Below are positions 411-63,109 of a stretch of DNA of 64,000 bases, piece after piece. Position 1 is the stretch's first letter. Each line of letters opens with the position of its first letter. The notes below the pieces were generated by a model, which saw only the letters and a list, made by a program, of their open reading frames with translations, searched no databases and was not told the DNA's origin. The stretch is from Heptranchias perlo. Taxonomy: Eukaryota. A program made the translations under genes and the position numbers. The stretch covers positions 14,694,001 to 14,758,000 of the forward strand of contig NC_090340.1 of assembly GCF_035084215.1 (NCBI RefSeq), written 5' to 3'.

Positions 411-933
411 CCAGATTCGGGGGTTATCGAATATAACTCCCGTAGTTTCTTACAGCAGATGTCATGTTTAAGCTGTGAGATCTGTCCGATACCTACTAAT
501 GCCCTATTTTTATTGTCGATAATGTGTAGATTACTCGTCACTGTCTATCTGTATGTATCAACCGTGGAAAAACTAGGCGCGTCATCTTTCCCCAGTGTTC
601 AATCATTGAATTCTTATTGGAATATGTAGCGCAGATATTTATCAGAAATGATGTAATGGGTCTGTTTGAAAATTGCGATTAAAGTTGAATAATTTAAAGG
701 ATTGGGCTCAATAATAACACAAGGTATACCACAGGTGTAATTGAACAGAGGCCTTAGCCATGAGTGATATTGGTGAGGTTTGCGTAGATGACGTGTGTAA
801 CATTAAAAAGACAGGTTAATGGCTTTCTAATGGTGCTGCTACAATAAAATAGTTCGAAGATAAATCTAAATGATGTTTGGTATCTCCCAATGCTACTCAG
901 TAATCAGATTTTGTTCCATTCTCTGTTCCGCAA

Positions 934-1228
934 CTGCACCAACCGCGCTGAAGATTCTCTCCAGGACATCTGTATCTCTGACTTGTGTGTGAAACGGCTG
1001 AGGTCTATCCGAGAAATTCCACCCTCCCTCGGTATGAAAATGGCGTAGTAACTGCGATAGGAATACAAAACATTCAATGGCAGATAACTGAAGTGCTGTA
1101 TGACGTTTCCTGCTCTTTGGAAGAGACGCAGCCTGTGCCGAGCGGTGCCAGTTACACCTGTTTGGTATCTCACATGCCGCTCGAGACTCCACCTGTGGTC
1201 ATCTACACGGTTACCAATTCTAACACAG
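934..1228 (+). pseudogene. IgSF receptor copy A: defective C1-set exon
   Basis: Homologous to the intact C1 exon at 22671-22982 (CETAEVYP...YTCLVSH). The acceptor is mutated (ccgcAA at 931-933), there are small deletions with a frameshift before the first Cys, and the core Trp is changed to Arg. The donor gt at 1229 is intact. Confidence 0.85.
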
Positions 1229-1313
1229 GTACGAGGCCAACAGTCCAAGAAGGAGAGCCAGCTACTGTTAAATTCTTAAACAGATATTTCATAAAGTTCG
1301 CTCATATTAATAA

Positions 1314-2387
1314 TAAGACCATAAGGCCACAAGAGATTGGAGCAGGAGTAGGCCATTCGGTTCCTCAAGCCTGCTCCGCCATTTAATGATATCATGGCTG
1401 ATCTGATTTTTACCTCAACTCCACTTTCCCGCCCTTTCCCCATATCCTTCGACTGCCTTGCTAATCAAAAATTTGTCTAACTCAGCATTGAATACATTCA
1501 ATGACTCAGCCTCCACAACTTTTTGGGGTAAAGAATTTCAAAAATTCACGATCCTCTGGGAGAAGAAATTCCCCCTCATTTCCGTCTTAAACAGGCGACT
1601 CCTTATTCTGAGACTATTCCCCCTAGTTTTAGATTCCCCCAAGAGGGGTAACATCCTTTCAGTATCTACCTATCGAGTCCCCTCAGAATCTTATATGTTT
1701 CAATAAGATCTCCTCTCATTCTTCTAAACTCCAAAGAGTACAGACCCAGCCTGTTCAATCTTTCCTCATCAGACAACCCTTCCATACCCAGAATCAACCT
1801 AGTGTACCTTCTCTGAATTGCCTCCAATGCAAGTATGTCCTTCCTAAAATAAGGGCACCAGGACTGTATGCAGTACTGCAGGTATGGTCTCACCAGCACC
1901 CTGTATAGTTGTAGCATGACATCCCTGCTTTTATGCTCCATCCCCCTAGAAATAAAGACCAATATTCCGTTTGCCTTCCAGATAACCTGCTGTACCTGTA
2001 TGTTGACTTTTTGTTTTCATGTACGAGGACACCCAGATCCCTCTGTACCAAAGCATTTTGTGGTATTTCTGCATTCAAATAATATTTTGTTTTTTTAAAT
2101 TTTCCTCCCATAGTGGATGACTTCACATTTTCGCACATTATATTCCATCTGCCAAATTTTCGACCATTCGCTTCACCTGTCAATATCCCTTTGCAAACAG
2201 TTTGTGTCCTCACCACAACTTGCTTTTCAACCTATCCTTGTATCATCAGCAAATTTGGCTACAAGGCACTCTGTTACTTCATCCAATCCATTGATATATA
2301 TCGTAAATAGTTAAGGCCCCAGCACTGATCCCTGCGGCACTCCAATAGTTACAGATTGTCATTTGAAAATGAACCTTTTATCCCGAC
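1314..2387 (-). mobile_element. CR1 LINE 3' part (RT C-terminus and 3' tail), interrupted by the provirus
   Basis: LYRVLVRPYLQYCIQSWCP...RRMRGDLIETYKIL and the typical CR1 3' end. The element resumes at 11233. Confidence 0.9.
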
Positions 2388-8379: not shown

Positions 8380-8403
8380 CCATAACGGAGAGGGCTGAGA
8401 CCG

Positions 8404-10169: not shown

Positions 10170-10221
10170 CTTATGTTATTAGCTATGAATTAACCCAAAC
10201 TCCTGTCCTCTGTGTACTTTG

Positions 10222-11227: not shown

Positions 11228-11232
11228 CCGAC

Positions 11233-11790
11233 TCTTTATTTTCTGTTAGTTAGCCAATCCTCTATCCTTGCCAGTAAATTACACCCAACACCATGAGCTC
11301 TTATCTTTTGCAGTAATCATTATGTGGCACCTTATCGAATGCCTTTTGGAAATCCAAATATACTGCATCCATTGGTTCCCCTTCCTCAAAGAACTCTAAT
11401 AAATTTGTCAGACATGATTTCCCCTTCATAAAACCATGTGGACTCTCTTGATTGTTTACGAGTCTCCAAATGTCCTGCTACTACTTCCTTAATAATGGAT
11501 TCTAGCATTTTCCCAATGACAGATGTTAGGCGAACTGGTCTATAGTTACTTGCTTTCTGTCTCACTCCCTTCTTGAATAGGGCTGTTACGTTTGCGGTTT
11601 TCCAATCCGCTGGGACGTTTCCAGAATCAATGAATTTTGGAAGATTACAACCAATGCATCCACTATCTCTGTAGCCACTTCCTTTAAGACCCTCGGATGC
11701 AAGCCATCAGGTCCAGGAGAATTGTTAGCCTTTAGACCCATTAGTTTACCTGGTTTTTTTTCTCTAGTGATAATGACAGTGATAGTGACA
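11233..11790 (-). mobile_element. CR1 LINE 5' part (continuation of 1314-2387)
   Basis: SPGPDGLHPRVLKEVATEIVDAL. The sequence joins 2387 seamlessly, as shown by the uninterrupted copy near 29510. Confidence 0.88.
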
Positions 11791-12619
11791 ATCATTAAGA
11801 TAGTTCACGGAAAACTCCTGGAAAATATCAACAAAAACATAAAATTCATATTTTAATGTGAAATATAATTGAGAACCGATAGTAAAACCTGAAGTTATAT
11901 CATCCGCTGCACAAATATTCTCAGCCAAACCTTATTTGCCTTCAAATTCCTGTATTTGATGTAAAAGCAAGAGGTTTATCTTTGTTATCTGATTATATTC
12001 CATATTGTGCTTAATATTAATCACTTTATTTTTTGTTCCCATCATCAAATGGTTTTATTCGTTATTATTATCTAGCTTTCCTACAACACAACGATTACCA
12101 AGAGCTACGTTCAAATTATCGGCTCTCGCCTTTCTCCCAATGCAGTTACCGATCCTGACCACCATTTTCGGCGATTCCCCGTGAAGAGTTCTGAAATTAA
12201 GTCTCTGGCCAACTTGTGTCCCTCACCCCTCCATGGCACAGCGGTTTGGAGTTGAAACTGTCTCTTGCATTTCAACTAAGCGGTGCCCACAACCTGGCTG
12301 CAGTTCAGCCGGTTACACCGTTTTTGTAACAAACTGATTGTCGAGTCAGACAATAGTGAATAAATCACCGCACGTCGATCTCCTATACTATTCAGTGACA
12401 TTCAGTAATACAAAGGCGAACTTAATTATGACTTAACCATGAAGGCAGTGTTATCTGATTTCAAGGAGCGCCGATTGTTCCAGGCAGTAATATTCTCTGC
12501 ACTTCAAAACCAGAAATCCTCACGGAATCGGATTAAAATAGTTTTGATTGCCCGTATTTGCAACAAAAGTTTCCACTTTGCAACATGATAAATGGAATGT
12601 CCGGCGACACAAAATCACT

Positions 12620-14381
12620 TTCCAAACCATTTGGTTGTGGGTGCACAACTAGTTTGAGTGAAGTGCTCTGAGTCTCCGGCCACTAATGGCTATAGATCAT
12701 TGCTGATCGCTACAGTCAAACACTCTCGGTACGATCTAAAATTGAAAATCATGTTCGGCACCATACCGACTGTAGAAATCTCTTTGAAACCACTGATATG
12801 GAAACTCAGTGAATATTTTAATTATTCATTATGATAAAATTTCATTAATTCAAAGCTGAAAAAGAAGGCGTAACGGGACCGAACCGTTGTGAAAAGCCGG
12901 TACGTTCATTCATTCATTCCCGCAAAGGGTTCAATTATGCAGAAAGATTGATATCATGGAGATATTTAATCATAATCATGTCAGAACAATTTGCCTATTT
13001 CCTAAAAGTATTTGTTCCGCTTACCCGCTTAATGGGTCATACAAATCGTGTTCAGAAAAAAATATTTGACGCCAGCGGGGAAGGATTTCACCCTCGGGGA
13101 GGAAATAGTTTTTCGGAAAAGAAAAGCGAGCGCGGTGTAAAACGGGCGGCCGATTCGCTATCGCTCGTTTCGCGGTATCGCCGAAGGCCAATTTCACTCC
13201 CGCCCGGCGGCGCGTGGCTGTTGCAAATTATTAAATAGGAGGAAAGAAAACTGTCCGTTTAGTTAAAAATGCATCTAAGTAATAACTGTTTATAGATTCA
13301 ATATTATTTGTAATGGGGGAAAATAACTTAATGAATCAGTGTGCTGGAAGTAACGCTCATTTAAGCATTTCTTTATTATAAAATGAAGATTGACAGCTTT
13401 AAATATTAGGTACAGTGATCACAGTAGTCACCGGTCTTAACATTCGCACGTATGTAGCTATATTAACTATGGTTTCTGCACTTTATTTCTAGCGTATGTT
13501 GCTCTGTTCAATGTTTAACCAGTAGTCTGTAAACTGGTGAAGGCAATGAACTAGCCACATAACAAAACATATACTTGGTTCACATCCAGGAAACAAAGGC
13601 TGAGACAGTTGATACGCTGCAATAGGTTTGAGCAAAGCTCAGTAAACTCCAAGACGTAAATTTGCAGAGGAAAGGACTGTGTACCATCAGCCGGAGCTTG
13701 TAAGCGGAACAGGCGGTCACAGATCACCAGTGTAGCATCAACGTTGTGGTCATAACGGAAAATATAAGGTTGGTTGACCCTTGTGTATTGTAACTAACGC
13801 TGTTTGCGTGTTATTCTGATGATTGTTTTCGGCAGCAATCCACAAACGGGCAAAACGACCAATTAACAATATTTCCAAAGATGGGTTCACAGACCAAACA
13901 AGGGACCGACACGACTCTGGAAGTGTCAAGCTCCAAACAAACGGAGAAACCCAAAATAAATACAGAATAACATATTCCAATATTATATCATTGATCGTGG
14001 GTGTAATTATTTGTTATTGCTTAATCGTTTGAGGAATTTTCATTTATTTTCTTGTAATAAAAATGAACTTTCCTTGCATATTTTTAATCAATATGCACTA
14101 TTTAACAGATGCGAAATCTTTGCAACGATACGCTAATTGTTTTGCTGTACCTCGATATTATCATGCATAATTTCAATAAAAATATATGATCTACGATTTC
14201 TCTCTGTTCACCATTAATGATGATTCTTCTTCGCGAGTAAAACCGTGAAACCTGGGTTTTGACCGATGTGTTTCCTTACTGTATTCTGCCTTCCAGTCCA
14301 GGCGATTCTCCTGATGTGGAAGGCAGGACGCTCCAGTCTATTGACTCGTCCATAAACCCACTGAACCCAGTTTGCAGTTGA
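12620..14381 (+). pseudogene. IgSF receptor copy A: 3' (cytoplasmic-candidate) exon remnants; TM exon deleted
   Basis: 12620-12812 is homologous to 24545-24740 (QTLSV...TDMETQ*). 14302-14381 is homologous to 26205-26284 (GDSPDVEGRTLQSIDSSINPLNPVCS*). The ~700 bp that holds the TM exon in copy B (about 23680-24365) is absent near 12385-12440. Confidence 0.6.
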
Positions 14382-15119
14382 TGGAGCATGAGATGCCTTT
14401 CTCTGAACTCTGAATGAATATTCATTCCTATCCGAAACGATGCGCCCGGACAGTACCAGTTCACTTCTAAAGGTCCTAAGTAGTGAGAAAAGCCCGACGG
14501 AGCTGAATGCATTTTTATTGGAGAAAAGACTAAATTTATAGGGATTCAGGTCTTTCAAGTGTCGAAAGACTTGGATAATGTGGCAAAAAGCGGGTTTTAT
14601 GGTTTTAATACGCAACTGGAGGCTCTGACTTACCAAGCCTCAAGAAAGAGAATAGAGTTAAAATCATTTGCCTCTTTTACTGTGGATGTCTGATCAACTG
14701 AGGGATAACAACAGTTTGAAAGGTTAAACTATCAGATATTTCACAAGTAGATCACTTGAATTACAGGACGAGAACGAGCTGGTTACTGGAAGAACAGCAG
14801 CCCAACAGTTCCAGTGACTAAGCCCTTTACTCAGAATTTAAAGATAATACAAGACGAAGTGAATCAGTTGCATTTTATTTACCTTAACTGTCCTGGTTTG
14901 ATGACTGTGTCCATCAACATGCATTTCAGAGTCCTAGAATGTTACAGCGCGGGAAAAGTTCATTGGGCTTCTTAAGTCTGTACATTTTTTCTATCCATAT
15001 GAAACATTTAACTTGTCCTACTTTTCTTTTGGATTCGCACTATCTTTGATATCCGTATTTCAAGCAGCTAATTCCATTCTAAAAGAAATCCTGGACTGTG
15101 TTTGTGGCAGAGAACTCCA

Positions 15120-18100
15120 TATTGGCATAGGGTAAATAAGATCAGAGAGATGAATGCGTGGCTCAAGGGTTGGAGTGGGAGAAGTGGGTTTCGATTCATG
15201 GGGTACTGGCACCAGTACTGGGGAAAGAGAGAGTCGTTCCGTTGGGATGCACCACACCTGAACCATGCTGGGACCAGAGTTCTAGCGAATCGAATGACTA
15301 GAGAGGTAGATCGGGCTTTAAATTAAATAAGGCGGGGTGGGGGTAGGGTCCAGGTGGAGATAAATCTACAATGCTAAAGAGAAAAGACAAAGAAGCAGTG
15401 CAGGAAAGTGATTGCGGTAAGGGTAACCAGATTGTGTCAGGAAGGGACAGAGTGTACAAACAAAAGAGTGCATTAACAAATAGGTCCGGCTAAGAAAAAA
15501 TGGTAATAAGACAAGTAGGGCCATAGTGCAAAACAATGTTAAGATGTCTAAAAACGATAAAACGACAAATGTAAAGGCACTGTATCTGAATGCACGAAGC
15601 ATTCGTAATAGGGTAGACGAATTAACAGCGCAAATAGTTGTAAACGGATATGATATAATTGCAATTTCACAGATATGGCTGCATGGTGACCAAGGCTGGC
15701 AGCTGAATATCCAAGGGTATTCGATGTTTAGGAAGGACAGGCAAAAAGGAAAAGGAGGTGGGGTGGCGTTGTTAGTAAAGGATGAAATCAGAGCCATAGT
15801 GAGAAAGGATATTGGCTCAGAAAAGCAAGATGTAGAATCCGTCTGGCTGGAGTTAAGAAGCACCAAGGGGCAGAAAACACTGGTGGGAGTTGTCTATAGG
15901 CCTCCAAACAGTACTGGTAATGTAGAGGATGGCATCAAACAGGAAATTAGAGATGCATGTAACAAGGGTACTACAGTAATCATGGGTGACTTTAATCTAC
16001 ATATAGACTGGCCAAATCAAATTAGCAATAATACTGTGGAGGATGAATTCCTCGAGTATGGACGAGATGGTTTTTTAGACCAGTACCTTGAGGAGCCAAC
16101 CAGGGAACAGGCTATCCTAGATTGGGTATTGTGCAATGAGAAGGGGTTAATTAATAATCTTGTTTTGCAGGGTCCTTTAGGGAAGAGTGACAATAACATG
16201 ATAGAATTCTTCATTAAGATGGAAAGTGAAGTAGTCCAATCCGAAACTAGGGTCCTATATCTAAATAAAGGAAACTACGAAGGTATGAGGAATGAGTTGG
16301 CCATGATAGATTTGGAAGCTTCATTAAAAGGCATGACAGTGGATAGGCAATCGCTAACATTTATGGAACAAATGCATGAATTGCAATAATTATACATTCA
16401 TTTCGGGTGCAAAAACACAAAAGGAAAATCGGCCCAAACATGGCTAACAAAATAAATTAAGGATAGTATTCGATCCAAAGAGGAGTCATATAAAGTTGCA
16501 AGAAAAGTATCAAGCCTGAGGATCAGGAGCAGTTTAGAATTCAGCAAAAACGGACCAAGAGATTGATTAAGACCGGAAAAATAGAGTATGAGGAAGCAAA
16601 ATAAAAGTGGACTGTAAAAGCTTCTACAAGTATGTAAAAAGAAAAAGATTAGTGAAGACAAACGTAGGCCCCAAACAATCAAAAACGGGAGATTTTATAA
16701 TGGGTTACAAGGAAATGGCAGAACAATTAAACAGAATCTTTGGTTCTGTCTTCATGGAAGAGTATACAAATAACTTCCCAGAAATATTAGGGAACTAAAG
16801 GTCTAGTGAGAAGGAGGAATTAAAGAAAATTAGTATTCGTAAAAAATAGTGCTGGAGAAATAAATGGGACTGAAAACCAATAAATCCCCAGGGCCTGATA
16901 ATCTGCATCCCAGAGTACTAAAAGAGGTAGCCATGGAAATAGTGGATGCATTGGTTGTCATCTTCCAAAATTCTATAGATTATGGAACAGTTCCTGCAGA
17001 TTGGTAGGTGGCAAATTAACACCACTATTTAAAAAGGAGGGAGAGAGAAAACAGGGAACTACAGACTGGTTAGTGTAACATCAGTAGTAGGGAAAATGCT
17101 AGATTCTATTTCCAAAGAATGTGATAACAGGACACTTGGAAAATATCAACGGGATTAGACAAAGTCAACATTGATTTATGAAAGGGAAATCATGTTTGAC
17201 AAAACTACTGGAGTTTTTTGAGTACGTAAGTGGTAGAATAGATAAGGGAGAACCAGTGGATGTGGTTTATTTGGATTTTCAGAAGGCCTTTGATAAAGTC
17301 CCACGTAACAGGTTAGTGTGCAAAATTAAAGCACATGGGATTGGTGGTAATATACTGGCATGGATTGAAAATTGGTTAACAGACAGGAAACAGAGAGTAG
17401 GAATAAATGGGTCTCTTTTGGGTTGGCAGAATTCAGTGCTTGGGCCCCAGCTATTCACAATATATATCAATGATTTGGAAGAGGGAACTAAATGTAATAT
17501 TTCCAAGTTTGCTGATGACACAAAACTAGGTGGGATCGTGAGTTGTGAGTGTGATGCAAAGAGGGTTCAAGGCGTTTTAGACAAGTTGAGTGAGTGGGCA
17601 AATATATGGCAGATGCAGTATAATGTGGATAAATGTGAAGTTATCCACTTCGGAAGGAAAAACAGAAAGCAGCGTATTATTTAAATGTAGATAGATTGGG
17701 AAATGTGATGTACAAAGGGACCTGGGTGTCCTTGTACACCAGTCACTGAAAGCAAACATGCAGGTGCAGCAAGCAGTTAGGAAGGCAAATGGTATGTTGG
17801 CCTTCATTGCAAGAGGATTTGATTAGAGTATCAAGGATGTCTTACTACAGTTATACAGGGCCTTGGTGAGACTAAACCTGGATTATTGTGTGTAGTTTTG
17901 GTCTCCTTACCTAAGAAAGGATATACTTGCCATAGAGGGAGTGCAGCGAAGGTTCACCAGACTGATTCTTGGGATCGCAGGACTGTCGTATGAGGAGAGA
18001 TTGGGTTGACTCAGCCTGTATTCACTCGAGTGCAGAAGAATGAGAGGGGATCTCATTGAAAGATATGAAATTCTGACAGGTCTAGACAGACTGGATGCAG

Positions 18101-18410
18101 GGAGGATGTTTCTCATGGCTGGGGGGTCCAGAACGAGGGGTCACAGTCTCAGTCTTTAGGACTGAGATGAGGAGAGATTTCTTCACTCAGAGGGTGGTGA
18201 ACCTATGGAATTATTTACCACAGAAGGCTGTGGAGGCCAAGCCACTGAATATATTTAAGGAGATAGATACATTTCTGGACGCAAAAGGCATCAAGGGGTT
18301 TGGGGGGAGAGCAGGAATATGGTATTGAGATAGAGGATCAGCCATGATCATATTGAATGGCGGAGCTGTTTTGAAGGGCCGAATGGCCTACTCCTGCTCC
18401 TATATTTCTA
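15120..18410 (+). mobile_element. CR1 LINE (ORF1 esterase end, APE endonuclease, RT, 3' tail), degenerate
   Basis: YLNARSIRN, GGGVALLVK, VYRPP, MGDFN, YLDFQKAFDKV, FADDTKL. Absent from the paralogous site near 27095. Confidence 0.93.
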
Positions 18411-20317: not shown

Positions 20318-20740
20318 ACGCCCCATCCACCACGCCAAACATTCACTCCCTTCACCACCGGCGCACTGTGGCTGCAGTGTGTACCATCAACAGGATGCAC
20401 TGCAGCAATTCGCCAAGGCTTCTTCGACAGCACCTCCCAAACCCGCGACCTCTACCACCTAGAAGGACAAGGCTAGCAGGCACATAGGAACAAGACCACC
20501 TGCACGTTTCCCTCCAAGTCACACACCATCCCGACTTGGAAATATATCACCGTTCCTTCATCGTCGCTGGTTCAAAATCCTGGAACTCACTACCGAATAG
20601 CACTGTGGGAGAACCTTCACTAATGAACTGCAGCGGTTCAAAAAGGCGGCTCACCACCACCTTCTCAAGGGCAATTAGGGATGGGCAATAAATACTGGCC
20701 TTGCCAGCGACGCCCACATCCCATGAACAAATGAAAAAAA
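20318..20740 (+). mobile_element. 3' fragment of the second LINE family
   Basis: NIHSLHHRRTVAAVCTINRMHCSNSPRLLRQHLP plus the same 3' tail as 3445-4687. Confidence 0.85.
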
Positions 20741-21294
20741 GAGCTCGAGATTAGAGGCGATAAAGGAGCAGATTTTGCTAATACTTTCTAATGCGGCATC
20801 TTGCAGCCCTGCTCCAAAAACATTAGGGCACTGGGCAAAGGGAAGAAGTCCGCATTCGGGATATCACATTAGAGGCAATTCCATATGGAATTCCTGCTGC
20901 TCGACCGCCCGGCAGCAGCAGTTCAGGAAGGGTAACTGGAAGACAGTAGTAACTGGAGAGTTATTTCCCTTTAAAATATTGAAGGAATATAAGATAAATC
21001 TGTTATGAATTTCTGTGTTAGAAGAAGCAGAATCGGTGGAATTGACACCTGTTTAGAGAAAGTAAAATGTTGGTAAGTGCAAAGTGATTGTGACACAGGC
21101 GACTGCACTGGTTGCTTAGGAACAAAACGGTCAGCAAATCTCACTTCACCAACGAAACCTATTTTCCGAACCTGCAGCTACAGGGGGTCGAACGTCATTG
21201 TGACGCATTTCAGATTAAATAATCAGCAGACCCTTCTTCTCATGGCAAACTCATGATCAGTGCAGTCTGTGATCAGAGTAATCTTTTACTCGTA

Positions 21295-21355
21295 ATGTTG
21301 TCGAGTGTGGTGCTTATGTTCCTGCTCCTGTCTCTCCGGGGAATTATTTACACAG
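21295..21355 (+). CDS. IgSF receptor copy B exon 1: signal peptide MLSSVVLMFLLLSLRGIIYT
   Basis: Hydrophobic leader with phase-1 donor cag|gtatc. Homologous leaders at 55167 and 62690. There is an upstream in-frame ATG at 21253. Confidence 0.8.
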
Positions 21356-21551
21356 GTATCTTTTATTCTCCATCCCAGCTGTCGCAATGAAGAAATGCAC
21401 CTGAAGGTGTTACCACTTAAACTGAATGACATTTAGTTCGTCTGCTCTATATTCTTCTTTCTCTAATTTATTTCCATGTACAAATATTTTCGAAAGTGCC
21501 TGGTTCCACATAGCATATAAGTAACCAAATTTTTAATCTATTTTCTAACAG

Positions 21552-21854
21552 CTGCTGCACGTATTTCTCAAACCCCCGAACAAGTGATTGCATTAAGGGG
21601 GGAAAACATCACCTTCTACTGTGTAATCCCGCTCTCTCAGGACAACTCAGAAGTGCATTGGTGGAAACAGGGCGAGAAAGCATATTTGCAAACAACGGTC
21701 GATAACAGAAAACGATTTGGTGTCAAAAATAAAGGAGCCAGTTTCTTTGAGCTACGGAACGTGACCTTCCAAGACTCTGGAATCTATCAATGCACAGTGA
21801 TCCGTCAGGGAAGCGTTAGTGGAAATGGAACGGGCTCAAATCTAATTGTGTGCG
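21552..21854 (+). CDS. Copy B exon 2: V-set domain with germline-joined J-like G strand
   Basis: Acceptor ttttctaacag, donor gtaagt, phase 1-1. Reads ISQTP...GENITFYC...VHWWKQ...FELRNVTFQDSGIYQC...GNGTGSNLIV. Confidence 0.93.
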
Positions 21855-22670
21855 GTAAGTGACTGGGGTGAGTGGGAACTTCCAAATGTATCCAATGTAA
21901 CAGTATAAAACATTTATATTAATACATTTACAGTCAAACTCAATGTTACTCCAATATCTCTGTACACAGCTGTTAATTACACGGCACGATATGGCGCTTC
22001 ATTTGCTGAGTTGTGTGAAATTCCATCAATATTAACCAGAGTAAGTAACATGTTACTGGATTCATCTCAACATGTAGTTTCCACATCAGACTTCTGATGA
22101 GGGAAGGTGCGGAACAAATTCGAAACATATAGATGACTGACTGAAGATCTTTCATATTAATGCGCCTCCCCCGCCATATACAGGGCTCTTAACCTATTTT
22201 AGAAGCTTTGTTTGTCCCTGTCGCTGTCAGTGGGGTTTAACGGTCACTCCTGAAATTAATGCTCACATACTGACAGGCTGGTTCGAATGGCGGATTTCAG
22301 ATAAGCTACAATTAACTGTTAATTATTGGATTTACTCAACACATAGAACCATGAACCAGAACTTTGCCGCCGCTTTCCCCTGCAATAAACGAATCATTCC
22401 CCAGAGATTGTGTTGCTGAAGCCTTCTGAGGTTGAGCGGAATGTAATTTCCCTGAGCCGATCCCATGCTCCTGCTGTGTGGGCTTCCCGATATCCACTCG
22501 GGCCCTCCTTTCAGTATCAGTAATACACAGATTACTCGTTTCTCTCTTGGGGAGACAGACAGACAGAGCTAGAGATCCTAACAGAGAAGGACAGAGGATG
22601 CCATTCTTCTCCCACATCTTCTGTTACCTATCTCCCCAGAAACCTGATTTTCCACATTTTCTGTCCACAG

Positions 22671-22982
22671 CTGCTCCAACTCCACTGAAGATTGTCTCCA
22701 GGACACCCGAGAGCAAACCATCTGCTTCTCTGACTCTTGTGTGTGAAACGGCTGAGTTTTACCCGGAGGATTTCACCCTCACTTGGTATAAAAATGGCGT
22801 CAAAACCACAACTGGGATAAATATGACTAAACGGCGGAACACTGAGGGTCTGTATGAAGTTTCCAGCACTTTGGAAGTGACGAAGCCGAAGCGGAATGGG
22901 TCTGTTTACACCTGTTTGGTAACTCATGTCGCCCTCCAGACTCCCGCCATTGCAACCTACACTGTCAGCAATTCCGACTCAG
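22671..22982 (+). CDS. Copy B exon 3: C1-set Ig domain
   Basis: Acceptor ctgtccacag, donor gtaagg, phase 1-1. Reads LTLVCETAEFYPEDFTLTWYKNG...GLYEVSSTL...YTCLVTHVAL. Confidence 0.93.
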
Positions 22983-24164
22983 GTAAGGAGCCAACAGTCG
23001 AAGAAGCGAGGTCAGCTACTGTTAAACACTGAAAGGATATTTGATAGGGTTTGTTCATATTAATAATCAGGAAGGTGATTCACGGATAATTCACGGAAAA
23101 GTCATGAGAAATTTCAACAAAACATAAAATGCATATTTTAATGTAAAACATCATTGACAACGGGTAGTAAAAGCTGAAGTTATATCATCCGCCACACAAA
23201 CGTATTCAGTCAAACCTTATTAGCCTTCAAATTCCTTTATTTGATGTAAAGCAAATATAAGCAGAAGTTGAGTTTTGTTATCCGATTATATTTCATATTC
23301 TGCTTATTATTTATCACATTTTATTTATTTTTGTTTCGATGTTAAAATGGTTTTATTCGTTATTATTATCTAGCTTTCCTGCAACAGGGTGATTCCCAGG
23401 AGCTACATTTAAGTTGTCTGCTCTCGGGTTTCTCCCAATGCAGTTCCCGATCCTGACCCCCCTTTTCAGCTACTCCCAGTGAAGAGTTCTGAAATTAATT
23501 ATCTGACCAAATGAATCCCTCACCCTTCCATGGCACAACGGATTGGAATGGATCTGCCTCATACATTTCATTTAAACGGTGCTCACAACCTGGCTGCAGT
23601 TCTGCCGGTTACACCGTTTTATTAAAAGCTATTTGCCTGGTCAGGCGACAGTGAATAAACCATCGCGCGTTGATCTCCTACTTTGCGATATTCTTACCTC
23701 AATAAATACAGTGCAGTGTAGATATGTGAATTGGGAGTTTTAACCGATTTCTGCAATTCGGCATTTTGTCCGGCAACGGTGAAACGATTGTCATCGAATT
23801 GCCCGCGATTTCATCCAACAATAAATAAAGAACATGAGAAAAGTCAAGGGTAACAACAAACCATTCGGTCTAGGGAAACATCCCTCTCGTATTCTACCTC
23901 TTCTAAAATAGTGTTTCAAAAGTCATAAATTCAGTACCCCTCCTCGAAGATAATTCCAAAAAGGTCTCATCCATTTCAGACATTTGAGAAATTCCTTCCA
24001 ACATTATATCTAAAAAAAGTAACATTTTTAATTTATTGCCGTTCTACACTGTGCAGTTGCTGAAAGCATCATTACTTTAACCAAAAAACGCTCTTGCGGC
24101 ACCTTTTTAGGAAACGCCCGCCATAATGTACAACTCAATATATATGCTCCTATTATTCTTGCAG

Positions 24165-24278
24165 TTCGTGATGGCATGTCTCCTTACTACTCGGGTTTTA
24201 GATATGCGATGTGCGGTGTGGCGTTACTAGTGCTTCTGGTCATCATCCGGTCGCACTGCCAATTGCAGGTTAATAAAG
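24165..24278 (+). CDS. Copy B exon 4: stalk and transmembrane segment with Arg
   Basis: Acceptor ttcttgcag, donor gtaagt, 114 bp, phase 1-1. Reads VRDGMSPYYSGFRYAMCGVALLVLLVIIRSHCQLQVNK. Confidence 0.85.
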
Positions 24279-24557
24279 GTAAGTTCTACTGTAAGCGTTT
24301 GATTTTCATTCAAAACTTCAGGAAGCGGTGGGGAGAAGTAGTGAGAGTCTCCGAATAAAACAAAGAAGGCAGTGTTATCTGATTTCAGGCAGCGTCCATT
24401 GTTCCAACAGTAACAGATTCTGCACTTTATAACGCAGAAATCCTCACAGAATCAGCTTAAAAATTGATCCGATTACCTCTAAATTTGCAACAACAATTTC
24501 CACTTTGCAGTGTGATAAATGAATTGTACCCTGACACATAATCACTTTCCAAACCAG

Positions 24558-24778
24558 TGGGTTGTGGGTCCCCAACAATGGAGCGGTGTGAGGCTCCGGC
24601 CGGCAATGGCCGTAGGTCATTGCTGATCGCTACCGGGACTCCGATTCAAATACTGTCGGTACAATCTGAAATTGAAAGTCATGTTCCGCTTCATACTGAC
24701 TCTGGAAAGGTCTATAAAATCACTAATATGGAAACTCAGCAAATATTTCAATCGCTCCTTATAATTAAATTTCATTAA
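24558..24778 (+). CDS. Copy B candidate proximal terminal (cytoplasmic) exon
   Basis: Acceptor ttccaaaccag is in phase with the TM exon and the frame is open to a stop at 24778. Homologues in copy A and at 53689-53884 end in ETQ* and ETE*. Confidence 0.4.
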
Positions 24779-26204
24779 TTCACAGGTAAAAACTGCACCG
24801 AACGGTCGTGAAAGGCTGGTACGTTCATCCATTCATCCCCGAAAAGTGTTCAAATATGCAGAAAGATTGCTATCATGGAGATATTTTTATCATAATCATG
24901 TCAGAACAGTTTGCGTAATTCCTAAAAGTATTTGGTTTGTTTCGCTTAATGGGTCACTCAAATCGTGTTCAGAAAAACATTTGATGCTGGCGGGGAGGGG
25001 TTTAACCCCTCGGGGCGAAATTGTTTTTCGGAAAAGAAAAGCGAGTGCAGTGTACAACGGGCGGCCGCTTCGCTATCGCCCGTTTCGCGCTACCGCCGAA
25101 GGCCAATTTCACCCTGTCTCCGGTGTGTTGCTCTTTTAAATTATTAATTGGCAGAAAAGAAAACTGTCAGTTTCGTTGAAAATGTGTCTAAGTAATTACA
25201 GTTTATAGAGTCAATATTATTTATAATTGTGGAAATTCTTAATATTGTGGAACAACCGCTCATTTAATCATTTATGTGGTGTATAATGAATATTGACGGG
25301 TTTAAATAATAAGTTATAGCGAGCACAGTACTCACCGGTCTTAACATTTGCACTTATGTGACAATATTAATTATGGTTTCTGCAGTTTATCTCTCGTCTA
25401 CATTGTTCTGTTCACTGTTTAACTAGTAGTCTGTAAATTGGTGAAAGCAGTGAACTAGCCACATAACAAATCATATACTTGTCCCTGGCCTATTTGGGAA
25501 GCAGAGGCTGGGATCCTTGATACGCTGCATTAGGGTTGAACAGAACTCATTAAACTCCAACACGTAAACTTGAATTGAAGAGGAATGTGTAAAATTAGGC
25601 GGGACTCGAAAGCGGATCAGACAGAGACAGATTACCAGCGTAACAACAATATTCATCGGATATCGGAAAATATAAGGCTGGCTGACTCTGGTCGTGTATC
25701 GAATCGAAAGCTGTTTCTCTGTTATTCTGTTGATTGTTTTCGGCAGCAGTCCACAAACTGGCAAAACGACCAATTAACAATATTTCCAAACACGGATTAC
25801 AGACCAAAAAAAGGGACCCACGTGACTCTAGGCTCCAAAAAAAAGGGAAAATCTCAAAATAACAAATAAAACACAGATTAACATATTCCAGTATTATATC
25901 ATTCAAAAAGGTGTCATTGTTTGTTATTGCTTAAATGTTTGAGGAATTTTAATTGATTTACTTGTACTAAAAATGAACTTTCCTTCCAACTTTTGATCAA
26001 TCTGTCATGTTTTACAGATAAGAAAACTTTGCAATTATATACTTTTTTGTACCTAGTTATTATCATGCATAACTTCAATAAAAATAGATGTTCTACGATT
26101 TCTCTCTTATCAACCATTAGTGATCATTTTTCTTCACTAGTAAAACTGCAAAACCTGAGTTTTGATCTATGCGTTGCCTTGGTGTATTGTGACTTCCAGT
26201 ACAG

Positions 26205-26284
26205 GCGATTCTCCTGATGTGGAAGGCAGGACGCTCCAGTCTATGGACTCGTCCGTAAACCCACTGCACCCAGCTTGCAGCTGA
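26205..26284 (+). CDS. Copy B candidate distal terminal exon (short tail GDSPDVEGRTLQSMDSSVNPLHPACS*)
   Basis: Tandem AG acceptors (ttccagtacag). Strongly conserved with copy A 14302-14381, with the same length and stop. No Tyr motif. Confidence 0.5.
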
Positions 26285-28456
26285 TGGAACATGAGTTACC
26301 TTTCTCTAATCTCTGAATGACTATCCACTTCGCCCAGACAATTCCAAGCGGCTCCCAAAGGAAATGCCCAGATTATTCTCATTATGCTCTATCTTCAAAA
26401 GGACAGAGATTCGAGAGAGTTCTGAGACAAGCAACAAGAATGAATCCGGGACCTGGCAGTTAAGTTGTGAGAAAAGCCCCACGGAGCCGGTCGCATTTTT
26501 ATTGGAGGTAATACCAAATTAAAAAGGATTCTGGCCTTTTAGAAATGTTGAAAGACGTGGCTGATGTAGATAAGCTCGCTGTATGACTTAACACGCAACA
26601 ACAGGTTCTGAATTATCAATTCCCAAAGAAGAGAATAGAATTACAACCATTTTTTGTGTGGTTGTTTGTTCAGCTGGAAGATAACTAATAGTTTGAATGG
26701 TTAAACTGTCATCTATTTGGAAGTAGATCACTTGAATTACAGGGTGAGAACTATCTGGTTACTGGAAGAATAGCAGCCCAACAGTTCCAGCGACTAAGCC
26801 TTCAACTCAGAATTTAAAGATAATACAAGACGTAGTGAATCGGTTGCATTTTATTTGGCCTAACTCTCTTTGTTTGATGACTCTGTGCATTAACAAGCGT
26901 TTTAGAGACCTAGAATGTTACAGCAGAGAAACAGTTCATTGGGCTTCTAAAGTCTGAACGTTTTTTCTCTCCACATGAACCAGTTAATTTGTCCTATTTT
27001 GCTTTTAAATTCTCACAATCTTTCATATCCCTCTTTTCAAGCAACTAATTCCATTCTAAAAGAAATCCTGCACTGGGCTTGTGGCAGAGAACTATATATC
27101 GCATTCTAACCAGCCTCCGTTTAGAGAGTATGTTACCTCTCCCTTTATTTTTTGAGATTATGTTAAATTTCTGGTCAGTCGCTACAGTTTACTGACCACT
27201 GGAAACAATATAACATTATTACCTTATCATAACGCGTCTTAGTGTTGAAAACCTCTTAAACATCTCAGCTCAAGTGAAAGATGTCCAAGCTTCTCAAATA
27301 ATAACAACCCCACATTCCTGGTAATTAAATTTTCAATTGTTTTTATACCTTTAGTTTTAGAAAAACTCTTCCACCAGCTGAACATTACCTCCTTGCTTTT
27401 GTATTTTATGCCACCAAATACTAAACCAGGACATTCCCTTTGCATTTTTATTTTGCAATAAACTTCTGCTGCCATCATTCGTTAAATTCGCTCTGCTGCT
27501 CTCCATTTAAGATCCTATAATTTAAGATGTATTTCCCATTCCTACCTCCAGAAATGTAATATTTCACGTTTCTCTCCATTCGCCATGGCCATCTACCTGC
27601 TCTTCGAACTAACTATCGATGTCGCCTGCAGGATTTCACAAGCTGCATCGGAATGTCCTTCCCTCCTCCCCATTGTTTGTCATCTGCAAATTTTAATGTT
27701 GCTCCCTCAATTCCCCAGTCAAGATAATTAATCTTTATAATAAATAAAAGCAGCCCAACACAGACCCCGGGGAACACCTCTCGGCACATCTTTCCACTCC
27801 GAGAAATATTCTTTTACCCTTATACTTTGTTTTCTGTCCTCCAATCATCACTCTATTCCCATTAGCCACTTTGTCCTTACTTTCACGTGCCATTGTCGTA
27901 TGTGGTACCTTTTCAAATACGTTCGGAAAATCCATGCAAATTACATCTGCGGCATTCTCCTTCTCTTATTCTCTTTGTTATTTGTTCAATTAATTCTTTA
28001 AATCAAGCGGGATCTGCTTTTTCTAAACTCGTGATTCCTGGACCTGATTAGTTCAGGTTTCTACCAGAATTTCGCCGTTTTATAACGTTTGTCATAGGTC
28101 CTGCAAATTGCAAGTAAATGTGCAACTGTTTACCTGTCATTATGTTGCAGGTTGCTTCGCATTGTTTTTTTCTCATCCAATAACAATTCGTTGGCTTCGA
28201 GGAAGAGATTAAGTCAACGTGCTGTAGATTATTTTGAAAACTAGTTAAGCGAAAGTGACACATTTATGTGCAGTGGTACAAAATTAACATTTGGACATTC
28301 TATCAATCATTTGTTCTGTGAAAATGTAAGATATTAACGGAAGTGTTGACTAGTCTGGATTTAGCTACACGAAATGTTTTGCTAAATATCGACACTAGCG
28401 AATCGTTTTCTCGAGCTAACATGAAGCGCGTGTTATTTAATCGCCCCATCAGTGTA

Positions 28457-50797: not shown

Positions 50798-51112
50798 CTG
50801 TCCCAATTTTATCTTGATCAGCGGTGTAGATGATACTGGCGTGCACCAGCAGAGAGACATGAGATACGAGACAAGTATAAACAACCCCTCTCCGGGCAGG
50901 CTGCGCTTCTTCCATAAAAAAACTGGAAACCTCGTATAGCCCCTCCACTCTCCTGTTTTTCACAGTTTCTCTTCCAGTCAGAATTTCGACGCCACCTCTT
51001 CGCCAGGAGATTCCTAAGTGTTCCGGGCAAAAGGCAGCCTTTTTATGCTCGAGTTTCAGAGAAGTCGGTGAAATCCCTTCAATAGGATCGATTTTCAGGG
51101 GGCTTGGGGAAA
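50798..51112 (-). pseudogene. Copy E: degenerate C1 exon
   Basis: PSPLKI...LKLEHKKAAFCPE..ISWRRGG...EGLYEVSS...YTCLVSHVSL. The first Cys is lost and there is no AG at the expected acceptor (ttttctgacaa). Confidence 0.8.
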
Positions 51113-55166: not shown

Positions 55167-55843
55167 ATGTTGACGAGTTTTGTTTTTTCTCCGAGAGATC
55201 ATTTACACAGGTACCTACAATTCGATAACCCAGCTGCCTCGATAAACAAAAACACGTGAAATGATTTCCTCTGAAATACAATGAAATTTAAATCTCTGCC
55301 AATTTTGCTTCTTTCTTTTTTTCATCTCTACGTCGTGTCTATTACAATTAACCAAACTTTGAATGTATTTCCTGATAAACGCTTCTAGTATTTCGATCAG
55401 TCAATTAACTTCTTGAACAACCAATTATTTTCAGAGTGACACACATCACCTTCGATTGCATATTCTACTCAATATAAATCCAGTGCGATTTAGTTCATCT
55501 TTGCGATTCTTCTTTATCTCTTTCATTTGCAGGTAGAACTGTGCTCTCAAGTGTCTGGTTCTGCGTCCAATGCAATTAGCCAAACTTTGCATGTATTTTC
55601 TAACATCTGCGGCGCAGATTTTTCGATCTGAGTGGCTCGAATTCCCGAACAGGTGATGGCATTCAGAGGGACACACATTATCTTCGACTGTGTAATCTCC
55701 TTCTTTCAGGTCAACTCTTGGACAGAAGTGCTTTGGTGGAAACAGGTTGAGAATGATTACCTGCAAAGTGAAACGAATAGCAGAAAATGATTTGGTTTGA
55801 AAATTAAAGGAAGCGGTTTCCTTCAGTTGCTGAACGCGACTTT
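55167..55843 (+). pseudogene. IgSF receptor copy D: frameshifted leader (55167-55210) and truncated V exon (55607-55843)
   Basis: PEQVMAFRGTHIIFDCVIS...EVLWWKQVENDYLQSETNSRK*FGLKIKGSGFLQLLNAT. Acceptor AG is changed to AT, CGA has become a TGA stop at 55788, and a CR1 insertion follows. Not shown in the ORF track. Confidence 0.85.
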
Positions 55844-55847
55844 AAGA

Positions 55848-62689: not shown

Positions 62690-62744
62690 ATGTCGGCCAG
62701 TATGGTGTTTCTGTCCTTGACGCTCCGGGGGATTATTTGCACAG
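62690..62744 (+). CDS. IgSF receptor copy C exon 1: leader MSASMVFLSLTLRGIICT
   Basis: Homologous to the copy B leader, with an intact phase-1 donor cag|gtacc. Confidence 0.75.
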
Positions 62745-62914
62745 GTACCTCTTTATTCACAAGAACAGCTACTTCAATTTATAAAAAGATTCCGAAGTCG
62801 TTTCCACATAAATGCAATGATCGTAATTCCTCTATCTAGATTCATTTTCTCTCTCTTCCAACTCCATGTCGTATCTAATGCAATTAACACGGACTTGACT
62901 ATATTTTCTGACAG

Positions 62915-63109
62915 CTGCGGAACACAATTCGTTCAGAGTGACTCAAGCGCCCAAACGGGCAATTGTATCCAAAGGGGGAGACATCACCTTCTACTGCACA
63001 TTCTCCATCTCTCAAGCCCAGTCCCAAGACTCTGGAGTCTATCACTGCGCAGTGATCCGAGAGGGAACAGTTGGAGCAAATGGAACCGGATCATATCTAA
63101 TTGTGCATG
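62915..63109 (+). CDS. Copy C exon 2: V exon with in-frame 40-codon internal deletion (gene continues beyond the window)
   Basis: Both splice sites are intact. Reads VTQAP...GGDITFYCTFSISQAQS^QDSGVYHCAVIREGTVGANGTGSYLIVH. The following intron is homologous to 22180-22520 and 430-550. Confidence 0.8.

What the first reader, a model, noticed from the sequence alone, without database searches (positions are those of the whole stretch)
21295..26284. Intact non-rearranging 'VJ-C1-TM' receptor gene with the ectodomain plan of a TCR or Ig light chain
Seen: five phase-1 exons splice into an open type I protein of about 289 aa. It has a leader, a single-exon V domain ending in a J-like GxGT/S-x-L-x-V strand (CTVIRQGSVSGNGTGSNLIV), one true C1-set domain (FYP, WYKNG, YTCxVxH), a TM and a short tail, with no V-RSS/RSS-J split. 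Known: C1-set domains are largely confined to antigen receptors, MHC, beta-2 microglobulin, tapasin, SIRP and some B7 proteins. Germline VJ-type V domains occur in NKp30, SIRP, CD28/CTLA4 and NITR. Inference: this is an expanded innate receptor family with the architecture proposed for the pre-RAG antigen-receptor ancestor. It is probably only auto-annotated as SIRP-like or Ig-like.
Basis: partly seen in the sequence, partly recalled or inferred. Interest (0 to 1): 0.85.

Follow-up and report, generated by a model that had tools for sequence, protein, structure and literature searches.

The report
Shark SIRP-like VJ-C1 receptor gene
This is an intact-looking gene for a non-rearranging shark cell-surface receptor, built like one chain of a T-cell receptor, and it belongs to a large, little-studied family that databases label only as SIRP-like.

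Summary
Five phase-1 exons with canonical GT/AG sites give leader, one V exon with a J-like G strand, one C1-set domain, a transmembrane (TM) segment and a short tail (289 codons by exon lengths). There is no RSS.

Corrections: the V domain lacks the C'' strand, so it is a short V like IgNAR V, CD79b or I-set domains. Exon 5 is unverified, and no RNA covers the target's exons.

The gene belongs to a family found across cartilaginous fishes. All 20 representatives whose names I looked up are chondrichthyan. Their automatic names vary: SIRP-beta-1-like, SHPS-1-like, tapasin-related-like, NCR3LG1-like, CD276, MHC II beta-like and Ig lambda-like.

Long-tailed members carry ITIM-type tyrosines. Short-tailed members, like this one, carry Arg or Lys in the TM span. 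This is the pattern of paired inhibitory and activating receptors.

SIRP-alpha is the best non-antibody solved relative of this gene's V subclade. Other members score as well against UrIg2 or B7-H6, so nesting inside SIRP is not shown.

The neighbouring copies in the window are all broken. I found no paper describing the family. This scan had already flagged and followed up the same family on other DNA of this genome.

The parts
21295..21355 (+). Exon 1. Start codon and most of the leader (MLSSVVLMFLLLSLRGIIYT plus 1 nt). The last leader residues lie in exon 2, so the leader is split.
   Evidence: Donor GT at 21356-57. The leader resembles family leaders (68% over 19 aa to P0007, 65% over 17 aa to P0164).
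21552..21854 (+). Exon 2. A single-exon V-type domain that includes the J-like G strand. It is a short V without a C'' strand. It has three N-x-T sites and an unpaired Cys as its last full codon.
   Evidence: best single-domain hit is P0007, 73% identity, E 3.6e-40; model pLDDT 92.3; it sits in an 8-row clade with SH-aLRT 97.
21821..21850 (+). J-like motif GNGTGSNLIV. In the model, G92-T93-G94 breaks the G strand into residues 87-91 and 95-99, which is a GxG bulge. N91-G-T is a potential glycan site.
   Evidence: The family consensus is GNGTGSxLxV.
22671..22982 (+). Exon 3. A C1-set domain with FYP, 13 residues between Cys and Trp, and C-L-V-T-H.
   Evidence: PF07654, 60 bits; model pLDDT 85.1; the best structural matches are C1-set domains of MHC II, Ig, IgNAR, SIRP-gamma d3, UrIg2 and B7-H6.
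24165..24278 (+). Exon 4. Stalk, transmembrane segment and start of the cytoplasmic tail ((V)RDGMSPYYSGFRYAMCGVALLVLLVIIRSHCQLQVNK).
   Evidence: best match is the TM region of P0020, 67% over 24 aa, E 5e-9.
24200..24202 (+). AGA codon for the arginine near the outer end of the membrane span.
   Evidence: In the family, Arg or Lys in the span goes with tails that lack ITIM-type motifs.
26205..26284 (+). Putative exon 5. A 26-residue tail without tyrosine, ending in TGA. Unverified.
   Evidence: It differs from the upstream copy at 5 of 80 nt, against about 21% in the flanks. However, 4 of 69 windows of 80 nt are as conserved, and 4 of the 5 changes are non-synonymous. No family protein matches it.
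917..1317 (+). C1 exon of the upstream tandem copy. It is degenerate: the invariant Trp is replaced and there is a frame change near its start.
11799..15122 (+). Remainder of the upstream tandem copy (introns and the tail-exon copy at 14304-14378). The stretch holding the TM exon is missing. The copy is split from its C1 exon by about 10.5 kb of inserted repeat.
   Evidence: blocks at 79-81% identity. Target positions 23680-24359 have no counterpart. One search found the tail copy.
50814..51110 (-). C1-like exon on the minus strand without the B-strand cysteine. A pseudogene piece.
55632..55847 (+). V exon fragment with an in-frame stop, cut off by other sequence at its 3' end.
62690..63109 (+). 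Leader exon (62690-62744) and an internally deleted V exon (62915-63109, 65 codons) of a downstream paralogue. The gene runs off the window.

Best explanation
The locus encodes a germline, non-rearranging type I membrane glycoprotein. In order it has a split leader, a short V domain with a J-like G strand, one C1-set domain, a short stalk, a membrane span with an arginine near its outer end, and a short tail without tyrosines.

It is one member of a multigene family found across cartilaginous fishes. That family is the closest shark counterpart of the SIRP type of paired receptor. Long-tailed members carry ITIM-type tyrosine motifs and would inhibit. Short-tailed members with a basic TM residue, like this one, would pair through that residue with an acidic ITAM adaptor of the DAP12 or FcR-gamma kind and activate.

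Shown: the exon structure, the domain types, family membership, the family's taxonomic span, and the link between a basic TM residue and the lack of ITIM motifs.

Inferred: expression, adaptor coupling, the cell type, and ligand binding by the BC, C'-D and FG loops of the V domain.
For: - Open exons with GT/AG sites, all in phase 1.
- C1-set at 60 bits, and the three sequence criteria for C1 are met.
- Confident domain models: pLDDT 92.3 for V and 85.1 for C1. The C1 model matches C1-set domains at Z 12-14.3.
- All 14 plus 17 family-conserved residues are kept, whereas every neighbouring copy in the window is broken.
- Family span: 22 of 22 hits come from cartilaginous fishes, as do 29 of 48. 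All 20 of 20 representatives named do too, covering chimaera, sharks, skates and rays.
- The V exon sits in an 8-row clade (SH-aLRT 97) with Heterodontus, Scyliorhinus, Mustelus, Chiloscyllium, Mobula and Hemitrygon proteins.
- Of 61 distinct TM segments, 14 have Arg/Lys in the span and no ITIM-type motif, 3 have both, 28 have an ITIM-type motif and no basic residue, and 16 have neither. Fisher p = 0.0016.
- SIRP-alpha ranks 2nd of 443 solved-structure hits for P0183, a member of this gene's V clade, and 4th of 6575 for P0164.
- Long tails align weakly with an echidna SIRP-alpha tail. All 12 of 12 score above the shuffle mean, with z from 1.6 to 5.6.
- A 97-nt contig of run X1 reads across a V-to-C1 junction of a paralogue without an intron.
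Against: - No read or contig of the three runs lies on exons 1, 2, 4 or 5 of this gene. The one contig on exon 3 has 8 mismatches in 86 nt and so comes from a paralogue.
- The gene sits among pseudogenes and repeats.
- Exon 5 has no homologue among 210 stored proteins.
- This exact product was not found in the protein databases. Those searches could only be run exon by exon or with relatives.
- SIRP kinship is not firm. The V exon is 24% identical to echidna SIRP-alpha V, with 19 gap columns. No SIRP chain is among the 60 listed PDB hits of the V exon. For the chimaera member P0162, UrIg2 and B7-H6 outrank SIRP-alpha.
- The TM/ITIM counts treat related proteins as independent, and they use a crude motif and hydrophobicity rule.
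- No adaptor was examined.
Confidence: 0.6

Rival explanations
1. The gene is an unexpressed or recently silenced copy. It would be a young pseudogene with open exons, in a cluster that evolves by birth and death.
For: Four other family pieces in the window are broken. No contig covers its exons. No identical protein model turned up. Its exons look mixed in origin: V is nearest subclade A, while C1 and TM are nearer subclade B.
Against: About 870 nt of coding sequence are open in all five exons, and all splice sites are intact. All 31 family-conserved positions are kept, while the tandem copy, at about 79% identity, has lost its Trp and its TM exon. The three runs are small (115-137 million letters) and their kind is only guessed to be RNA, so absence there means little.
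Confidence: 0.2
2. The family is the shark B7H6 (NCR3LG1) family. Its members would then be ligands of the multigene shark NKp30 receptors, not SIRP-like receptors.
For: Some members are named NCR3LG1-like automatically: P0162, P0077 and P0093. For P0162, B7-H6 chains rank 4-5 of 1887 solved-structure hits at 52 bits, while SIRP-alpha ranks 28. The C1 model matches the B7-H6 C domain at Z 12.8 with 28% identity. From memory of the abstract, Flajnik et al. 2012 (Immunogenetics 64:571) reported matching numbers of NKp30 and B7H6 genes from sharks to mammals. That paper is not held, so I did not see it.
Against: For P0183, in this gene's own V clade, and for P0164, SIRP-alpha ranks 2nd and 4th, and no B7-H6 chain is among the 60 listed. 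Pairing of a basic TM residue with ITIM-free tails is the hallmark of paired receptors, not of B7 ligands. That last point rests on established knowledge and was not tested here.
Confidence: 0.12
3. The family would be a direct relic of the pre-RAG VJ-C1 antigen-receptor ancestor. It would lie outside SIRP and be as close to Ig/TCR as UrIg and UrIg2 are.
For: Ig light chains align colinearly over both domains (for example query 12-217 to chain 7-224). UrIg2 is the top solved hit for two members. The V exon is germline-joined with a GxG bulge. Among single-domain solved chains, the V exon is nearest by sequence to shark IgNAR V (32.7 bits). Foldseek ranks IgNAR V first (E 2.4e-9), and it is tied for first by Z (14.6).
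Against: All these scores are ties within a broad set of IgSF domains. NCAM Ig1 scores Z 14.7 and CD79b Z 14.6. The UrIg2 and heavy-chain scores are summed over several C1 domains. No linkage to the MHC or the antigen-receptor complex was seen. Notes of this scan place MHC features on other pieces of the assembly (unchecked). No rooted phylogeny was possible with the sequences the tools could supply.
Confidence: 0.1

Closest known systems
SIRP family (SIRP-alpha, -beta, -gamma; SHPS-1/PTPNS1)
   Same: An N-terminal V-type domain with a germline J-like strand, followed directly by C1-set domain(s), a TM and either an ITIM-type tail or a short tail with a basic TM residue. SIRP-alpha is the best non-antibody solved hit for P0183 and P0164. 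The C1 exon is 30-32% identical to echidna SIRP-alpha d2 and d3. The most frequent automatic names are SHPS-1-like and SIRP-beta-1-like.
   Different: It has one C1 domain instead of two. Only 1 of the 79 V+C1 models is a clean V-C1-C1 (P0051); a second, P0064, also has two C1 hits but in the order C1-V-C1, probably a fused gene model. The V lacks C'' and aligns to echidna SIRP-alpha V only with 19 gap columns at 24% identity. The family is far larger. Neither CD47 binding nor orthology has been shown.
UrIg and UrIg2 (shark non-rearranging Ig-like genes; PMC12227049, PDB 9dmx)
   Same: A single-exon VJ domain with a split leader, followed by C1-type domains, in cartilaginous fish. UrIg2 also has a TM. 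UrIg2 is the top solved hit for P0164 and P0162. The C1 model matches a UrIg2 C domain at Z 13.2.
   Different: UrIg has three C domains and is secreted. Nurse shark UrIg2 has nine C domains. Both are described as individual loci at specific linkage positions (MHC; antigen-receptor complex), not as a large paired family. UrIg2 is not among the 60 listed hits of the V exon.
B7-H6 (NCR3LG1) and B7 family
   Same: A V domain plus a membrane-proximal C domain, then a TM and a tail. B7-H6 ranks 4-5 for the chimaera member P0162. The C domain match is Z 12.8 at 28% identity.
   Different: It is not among the listed hits for members of this gene's clade. The B7 proteins are ligands without activating and inhibitory twins; this is from knowledge and was not tested.
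IgNAR variable domain (VNAR)
   Same: A short V without a C'' strand, from the same animal group. It is the best single-domain PDB sequence hit of the V exon (32.7 bits), the Foldseek top hit, and scores Z 14.6 with 97 aligned residues and rmsd 2.0.
   Different: VNAR is assembled by RAG-mediated rearrangement (established knowledge). Identity is only 22-26%. NCAM Ig1 and CD79b score equally well.
Ig light chain / TCR chain
   Same: The leader-V(J)-C1 order, phase-1 exons, a GxG bulge in strand G, and a colinear alignment over both domains.
   Different: No V/J split and no RSS. No C'' strand. A TM with a short tail, and germline family diversity in place of somatic diversity.

Membership tests
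C1-set Ig domain (Pfam PF07654; criteria in PMC2785349) | Profile match above the curated cut-off. | tested here: met
   60 bits against a cut-off of 21, E 2.9e-16.
C1-set Ig domain (Pfam PF07654; criteria in PMC2785349) | (F/Y)(F/Y/H)P at the start of the BC loop, x-V-x-H after the F-strand Cys, and exactly 13 residues between the B-strand Cys and the C-strand Trp. | tested here: met
   FYP, C-L-V-T-H, and C24...W38 with 13 residues between them. The criteria were read.
C1-set Ig domain (Pfam PF07654; criteria in PMC2785349) | A fold closest to C1-set domains. | tested here: met
   The best matches at Z 12-14.3 are C1 domains of MHC II, Ig CL/CH, IgNAR C, SIRP-gamma d3, TCR C, UrIg2, MHC I alpha3 and beta2m.
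VJ-type (germline-joined) V domain | The G strand with a GxG bulge and an x-L-x-V end is encoded in the same exon as the rest of the V domain. | tested here: met
   GNGTGSNLIV lies within exon 2. The model breaks strand G at G92-T93-G94.
VJ-type (germline-joined) V domain | A full V-set strand complement, including C' and C''. | tested here: not met
   Only 14 residues lie between strands C and D, with a one-residue C' and no C''. Pfam scores I-set and V-set equally, at 36.3 bits.
SIRP family | A V domain followed by two C1-set domains. | tested here: not met
   There is one C1 exon. Only P0051 is a clean V-C1-C1 among the 79 V+C1 models; P0064 also carries two C1 hits, as C1-V-C1.
SIRP family | Paired forms: an inhibitory tail with ITIM tyrosines, and an activating form with a basic TM residue and a short tail. 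| tested here: met
   At the level of motifs only. The family counts are 14, 3, 28 and 16, with p = 0.0016. This gene has Arg at 24200-24202 and a tail without tyrosine.
SIRP family | Sequences cluster with SIRPs rather than with other V-C1 proteins. | tested here: inconclusive
   SIRP-alpha ranks 2nd (P0183), 4th (P0164) and 28th (P0162). Only one true SIRP sequence (echidna, P0204) was available for trees.
SIRP family | Binds CD47; orthologous position next to the tetrapod SIRP neighbours. | not testable with these tools
Rearranging antigen receptors (Ig/TCR) | V and J segments separated and flanked by heptamer-spacer-nonamer RSS. | tested here: not met
   V and J-like parts lie in one exon. 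There are 0 RSS patterns in the window. The single heptamer on the Cys codon is within chance: 12 found against 7.4 expected.
UrIg / UrIg2 | VJ followed by three or more C1-type domains; linked to the MHC or to the Ig/TCR complex. | tested here: not met
   There is one C1 domain. Linkage was not tested. The features come from sections read.
B7H6 / B7 family | Closest sequence relatives are B7 family members; acts as a ligand of NKp30. | tested here: inconclusive
   B7-H6 ranks 4-5 for P0162 but is not listed for P0183 or P0164. Binding cannot be tested here.

The most novel reading that the evidence does not exclude
The family is not an offshoot of SIRP. It is a surviving membrane-anchored lineage of the pre-RAG VJ-C1 receptor, branching near the common stem of SIRP, UrIg/UrIg2 and Ig/TCR. 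Its C''-less V domain would be the nearest germline-joined relative of the IgNAR V domain, whose origin is unsettled.
Probability: 0.1. Interest if true: 0.8.

Novelty: new variant of a known kind. Interest (0 to 1): 0.45.

Why it matters
Searches for non-rearranging VJ genes are used to reconstruct how antibodies and T-cell receptors began. The field's current candidates are UrIg, UrIg2 and NKp30.

The two recent shark papers I searched (PMC12227049 and PMC10751288) contain no occurrence of "SIRP". My five searches on SIRP or signal-regulatory protein in sharks or cartilaginous fish (B7H6/NKp30) turned up no paper that describes a large shark and ray family of VJ-C1-TM genes with inhibitory and putative activating members.

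If the family is the shark form of SIRP, the V-C1 plan with a single C1 may be the older state of that family. If it lies outside SIRP, it adds a membrane-bound candidate to the antigen-receptor ancestry debate.

This particular gene adds one intact, short-tailed member with a TM arginine, and a local picture of birth-and-death evolution.

Tried and rejected
**RNA evidence.** One run search gave three small runs of one sample, with their kind only guessed as RNA. Laying them gave no cover of the target's exons, so expression stays open.

**The exact gene model and the species.** Neither was found. The best V identity is 73%, to a Heterodontus francisci protein.

**Discriminating SIRP from other families by fold.** This failed. 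Both domain models match many IgSF families within about 1.5 Z units.

**ESM Atlas search on the V exon.** It gave only generic V-set clusters.

**Mosaic origin.** The V exon is nearest subclade A, while the C1 and TM exons are nearer subclade B. The AU test did not reject a tree holding the C1 exon with subclade A (p = 0.122), and I named the group after seeing the tree. The idea is therefore kept only as a hint.

**Tail exon.** Its conservation against the tandem copy is high but not unique, so it is rejected as proof of an exon.

**RSS heptamer on the Cys codon.** Rejected as chance.

**Rfam and tRNA scans of 20500-27500.** Both were empty.

**Papers not held.** I could not see Flajnik et al. 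2012 on B7H6/NKp30, Ohta & Flajnik 2015, the 2023 UrIg paper, Fu et al. 2019 on PRARP (a search for the word found only unrelated papers), or Ohta et al. 2019.

Full report
**What is in the sequence**

I read 21000-26600 and translated each proposed exon separately. All five exons are open, have AG acceptors and GT donors, and are in phase 1.

| Exon | Coordinates | Content |
|---|---|---|
| E1 | 21295-21355 | leader |
| E2 | 21552-21854 | V |
| E3 | 22671-22982 | C1 |
| E4 | 24165-24278 | stalk and TM |
| E5 | 26205-26284 | tail, ends in TGA |

The lengths add up to 289 codons plus a stop. Every search was made exon by exon or with database relatives.

Pfam calls E3 a C1-set domain (60 bits, E 2.9e-16). 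It calls E2 a generic Ig domain, with I-set and V-set tied at 36.3 bits.

E3 meets the three sequence criteria for C1-set given by Hatherley et al. 2009: FYP, C-x-V-x-H, and 13 residues between Cys and Trp (PMC2785349, passages read; sequence).

The J-like strand GNGTGSNLIV lies inside E2. No heptamer-spacer-nonamer RSS exists in the window. A lone CACAGTG on the Cys codon is within chance, with 12 found against 7.4 expected.

**Domain models**

Each domain was folded with family alignments in which the window exon was the first row (A2 and A3).

The V model is confident (pLDDT 92.3).
- It has strands A, A', B, C, D, E, F and G, with only 14 residues between C and D. There is no C'' strand.
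- The G strand is broken at G92-T93-G94, which is a GxG bulge.
- Its nearest solved structures are shark IgNAR V domains, CD79b, NCAM Ig1 and TCR V domains. All are tied: Foldseek E is 2e-9 to 1e-7, and Z is 14.7 to 13.
- By sequence, the best single-domain PDB hit is also a shark VNAR (32.7 bits). No SIRP, NKp30 or B7-H6 chain is among the 60 hits listed there.

The C1 model (pLDDT 85.1) matches C1-set domains of MHC II, Ig, IgNAR, SIRP-gamma d3 (Z 13.4), UrIg2 (13.2), B7-H6 (12.8), MHC I and beta2m. This confirms the fold but does not pick a family.

**The family**

The V exon finds 589 representatives at E<=0.001 and 153 at E<=1e-10. Apart from giant multi-Ig proteins whose scores are sums, the hits are 120-500-residue proteins at 38-73% identity.

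I looked up names for 20 representatives. All 20 come from cartilaginous fishes: Callorhinchus, Heterodontus, Heptranchias, Scyliorhinus, Mustelus, Chiloscyllium, Hypanus, Hemitrygon, Mobula, Amblyraja and Leucoraja. Their automatic names include SIRP-beta-1-like, SHPS-1-like, tapasin-related-like, NCR3LG1-like, Ig lambda-like and "uncharacterized".

A word-seeded search with P0020 gave 22 of 22 chondrichthyan hits.

A search with a 21-row family profile gave 48 hits:
- 29 named chondrichthyan proteins
- 2 unnamed proteins
- 13 reptile proteins made of several V-like domains
- 1 echidna SHPS-1-like protein (E 5e-15)
- 1 Coregonus protein
- 1 mussel protein
- 1 frog VTCN1-like protein

HMMs of the two domains show the V-C1 order, with a one-residue linker, in almost all members. 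Of the 79 models with both domains, only P0051 (Amblyraja) is a clean V-C1-C1; P0064 also has two C1 hits, as C1-V-C1, which looks like a fused gene model. Among models outside that set, a few lack C1.

The window's exons keep every invariant and nearly invariant family position.

**Paired-receptor character**

Long-tailed members end in two to four motifs of the ITIM type, such as VTYAALDL and TEYAEIQ in P0024. Short-tailed members have Arg or Lys in the membrane span.

Counts over 61 distinct TM segments:

| | No ITIM-type motif | ITIM-type motif |
|---|---|---|
| Basic residue in span | 14 | 3 |
| No basic residue | 16 | 28 |

Fisher p is 0.0016. The rule is crude and the rows are related, so this is not a clean probability.

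The target has Arg at codon 24200-24202, in YYSGFRYAMCG. This is most like P0020, which has YYSGFRYTVGG. Its predicted tail has no tyrosine.

Twelve long tails align weakly with the tail of echidna SIRP-alpha. All 12 score above the shuffle mean, with z from 1.6 to 5.6. The alignment pairs an LTYAxL motif with a later EYA.

**Which known family?**

Whole members were searched against solved structures.

| Member | Result |
|---|---|
| P0183 (this gene's V clade) | SIRP-alpha 2nd of 443, SIRP-gamma 6th, UrIg2 10th |
| P0164 | UrIg2 1st, SIRP-alpha 4th of 6575 |
| P0162 (chimaera) | UrIg2 1st, B7-H6 4th-5th, SIRP-alpha 28th of 1887 |

Scores of multi-domain chains are sums. Ig light chains align colinearly over both domains.

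Against echidna SIRP-alpha, the V exon is 24% identical with 19 gap columns. The C1 exon is 30-32% identical to d2 and d3.

My reading is that SIRP is the best label for this gene's clade, but membership is not established. One defining feature, two C1 domains, is not met.

**Place in the family**

In a 90-row V tree, the window's V sits in an 8-row clade (SH-aLRT 97) with shark and ray proteins. That subclade therefore predates the split between sharks and rays.

In a 92-row C1 tree, the C1 exon falls with another subclade (SH-aLRT 89). Identities agree with this: 68-69% to P0164, P0166 and P0180, against 59-62% to the V partners. However, the AU test does not reject the alternative (p = 0.122). 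Exon shuffling is therefore a hint only.

**Surroundings**

Target positions 22655-27500 are a tandem duplicate of 917-1317, 11799-15122 and 18409-18840, at 72-81% identity. The upstream copy is interrupted by about 10.5 kb and about 3.3 kb of repeats, has lost the stretch with the TM exon, and has a degenerate C1 exon.

Other family pieces in the window:
- a C1 exon without its first Cys, on the minus strand (50814-51110)
- a V fragment with a stop codon (55632-55847)
- a leader plus a V exon with a 36-codon in-frame deletion (62690-63109)

The target is the only intact copy in the 64 kb.

Notes of this scan place the same family from 11 Mb before to 0.57 Mb after the window. Earlier follow-ups reached the same SIRP-like reading. 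I treated those notes as leads.

**Expression**

One run search found three small runs from one sample, with their kind only guessed as RNA. Laid on 21250-26350, they give the following.
- No cover of exons 1, 2, 4 or 5.
- Error-free contigs only in intron 4 (24913-25812).
- One 97-nt contig on 22676-22761 with 8 mismatches. Its 11 further letters do not end in AG. Instead they read like the end of a paralogue's V exon (compare 63104-63109) joined to a C1 exon start.

That contig fits a spliced paralogue mRNA. It says nothing about this gene.

**Exon 5**

Exon 5 is the weakest part of the model.
- A second AG five bases upstream gives another frame.
- An AATAAA at 24354 overlaps the stop of the read-through frame.
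- No family protein matches the predicted tail.
- Its conservation against the tandem copy (5 of 80 nt differ) is high, but three other windows of 69 share that level, and 4 of the 5 changes alter the protein.

**Literature**

Hatherley et al. 2009 already argued that SIRP, as a V-C1 receptor, is close to the antigen-receptor precursor.

UrIg (VJ plus three C domains, secreted) and UrIg2 (VJ plus nine C domains and a TM in nurse shark) are the current shark candidates (PMC12227049, sections 4 and 7 read).

The word "SIRP" does not occur in PMC12227049 or in PMC10751288. [quoted passage not shown]

Five searches found no paper on SIRP-like genes of cartilaginous fish. Several likely sources are not held, and supplements were closed. 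"Not in print" is therefore only as strong as those searches.

**Verdict**

This is a real, intact-looking, short-tailed member of a chondrichthyan VJ-C1 paired-receptor family of the SIRP type. It has a single C1 domain and a C''-less V domain. It is of moderate interest, and the scan had already met the family elsewhere in this genome.

Noticed in passing
window 62690-62744 and 62915-63109: The downstream paralogue has a V exon of only 65 codons that stays in frame. The B strand runs straight into the QDSGVYHC stretch, so strands C to E and the invariant Trp are missing. The gene runs off the window.
   Followed up: partly
window 21793-21799: A perfect RSS-type heptamer, CACAGTG, lies on the conserved Cys codon of the V exon (TGC ACA GTG). 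No nonamer follows at 12 or 23 bp, and the heptamer count in the window is within chance (12 found, 7.4 expected).
   Followed up: yes
window 24279-24360: If the exon 4 donor is not used, the frame reads on for 26 codons to a TAA that is part of an AATAAA at 24354. This could be an alternative short-tail 3' end by intronic polyadenylation.
   Followed up: no
window 24913-25812: Runs X1 and X2 hold error-free contigs only inside intron 4. A short repeat at 25060-25112 is covered at high depth with mismatches. This may be an independent transcript, a repeat, or DNA in the runs.
   Followed up: partly
window 21552-24278: The exons look mixed in origin. V is nearest subclade A (72% to P0007). C1 is nearer subclade B (69% to P0164 and P0180, against 59-62% for A). 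The TM exon is nearest P0020. The AU test gives p = 0.12, so this is not established.
   Followed up: partly
window 1317-11799 and 15122-18409: Two large insertions split the upstream pseudogene copy. They carry long ORFs that look like retroelement proteins.
   Followed up: no
proteins P0051, P0010 (no window coordinates): The family has architecture variants. One is an Amblyraja V-C1-C1 protein of 493 aa, which is the SIRP-like domain count. Another is a Callorhinchus V-TM-ITIM protein with no C1 domain.
   Followed up: partly
proteins P0191, P0193, P0129, P0195, P0197-P0203, P0205, P0207 (no window coordinates): Thirteen turtle and lizard proteins made of three to five tandem V-like domains match the family V profile at 33-53 bits per domain. 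Their automatic names vary widely, including pIgR-like, DSCAML1-like and FcRL5-like.
   Followed up: no
window 21851-21853: An unpaired Cys is the last full codon of the V exon (LIVC). The same position is Cys in several family members and His, Tyr, Trp or Arg in others. It could form an interchain disulfide.
   Followed up: no
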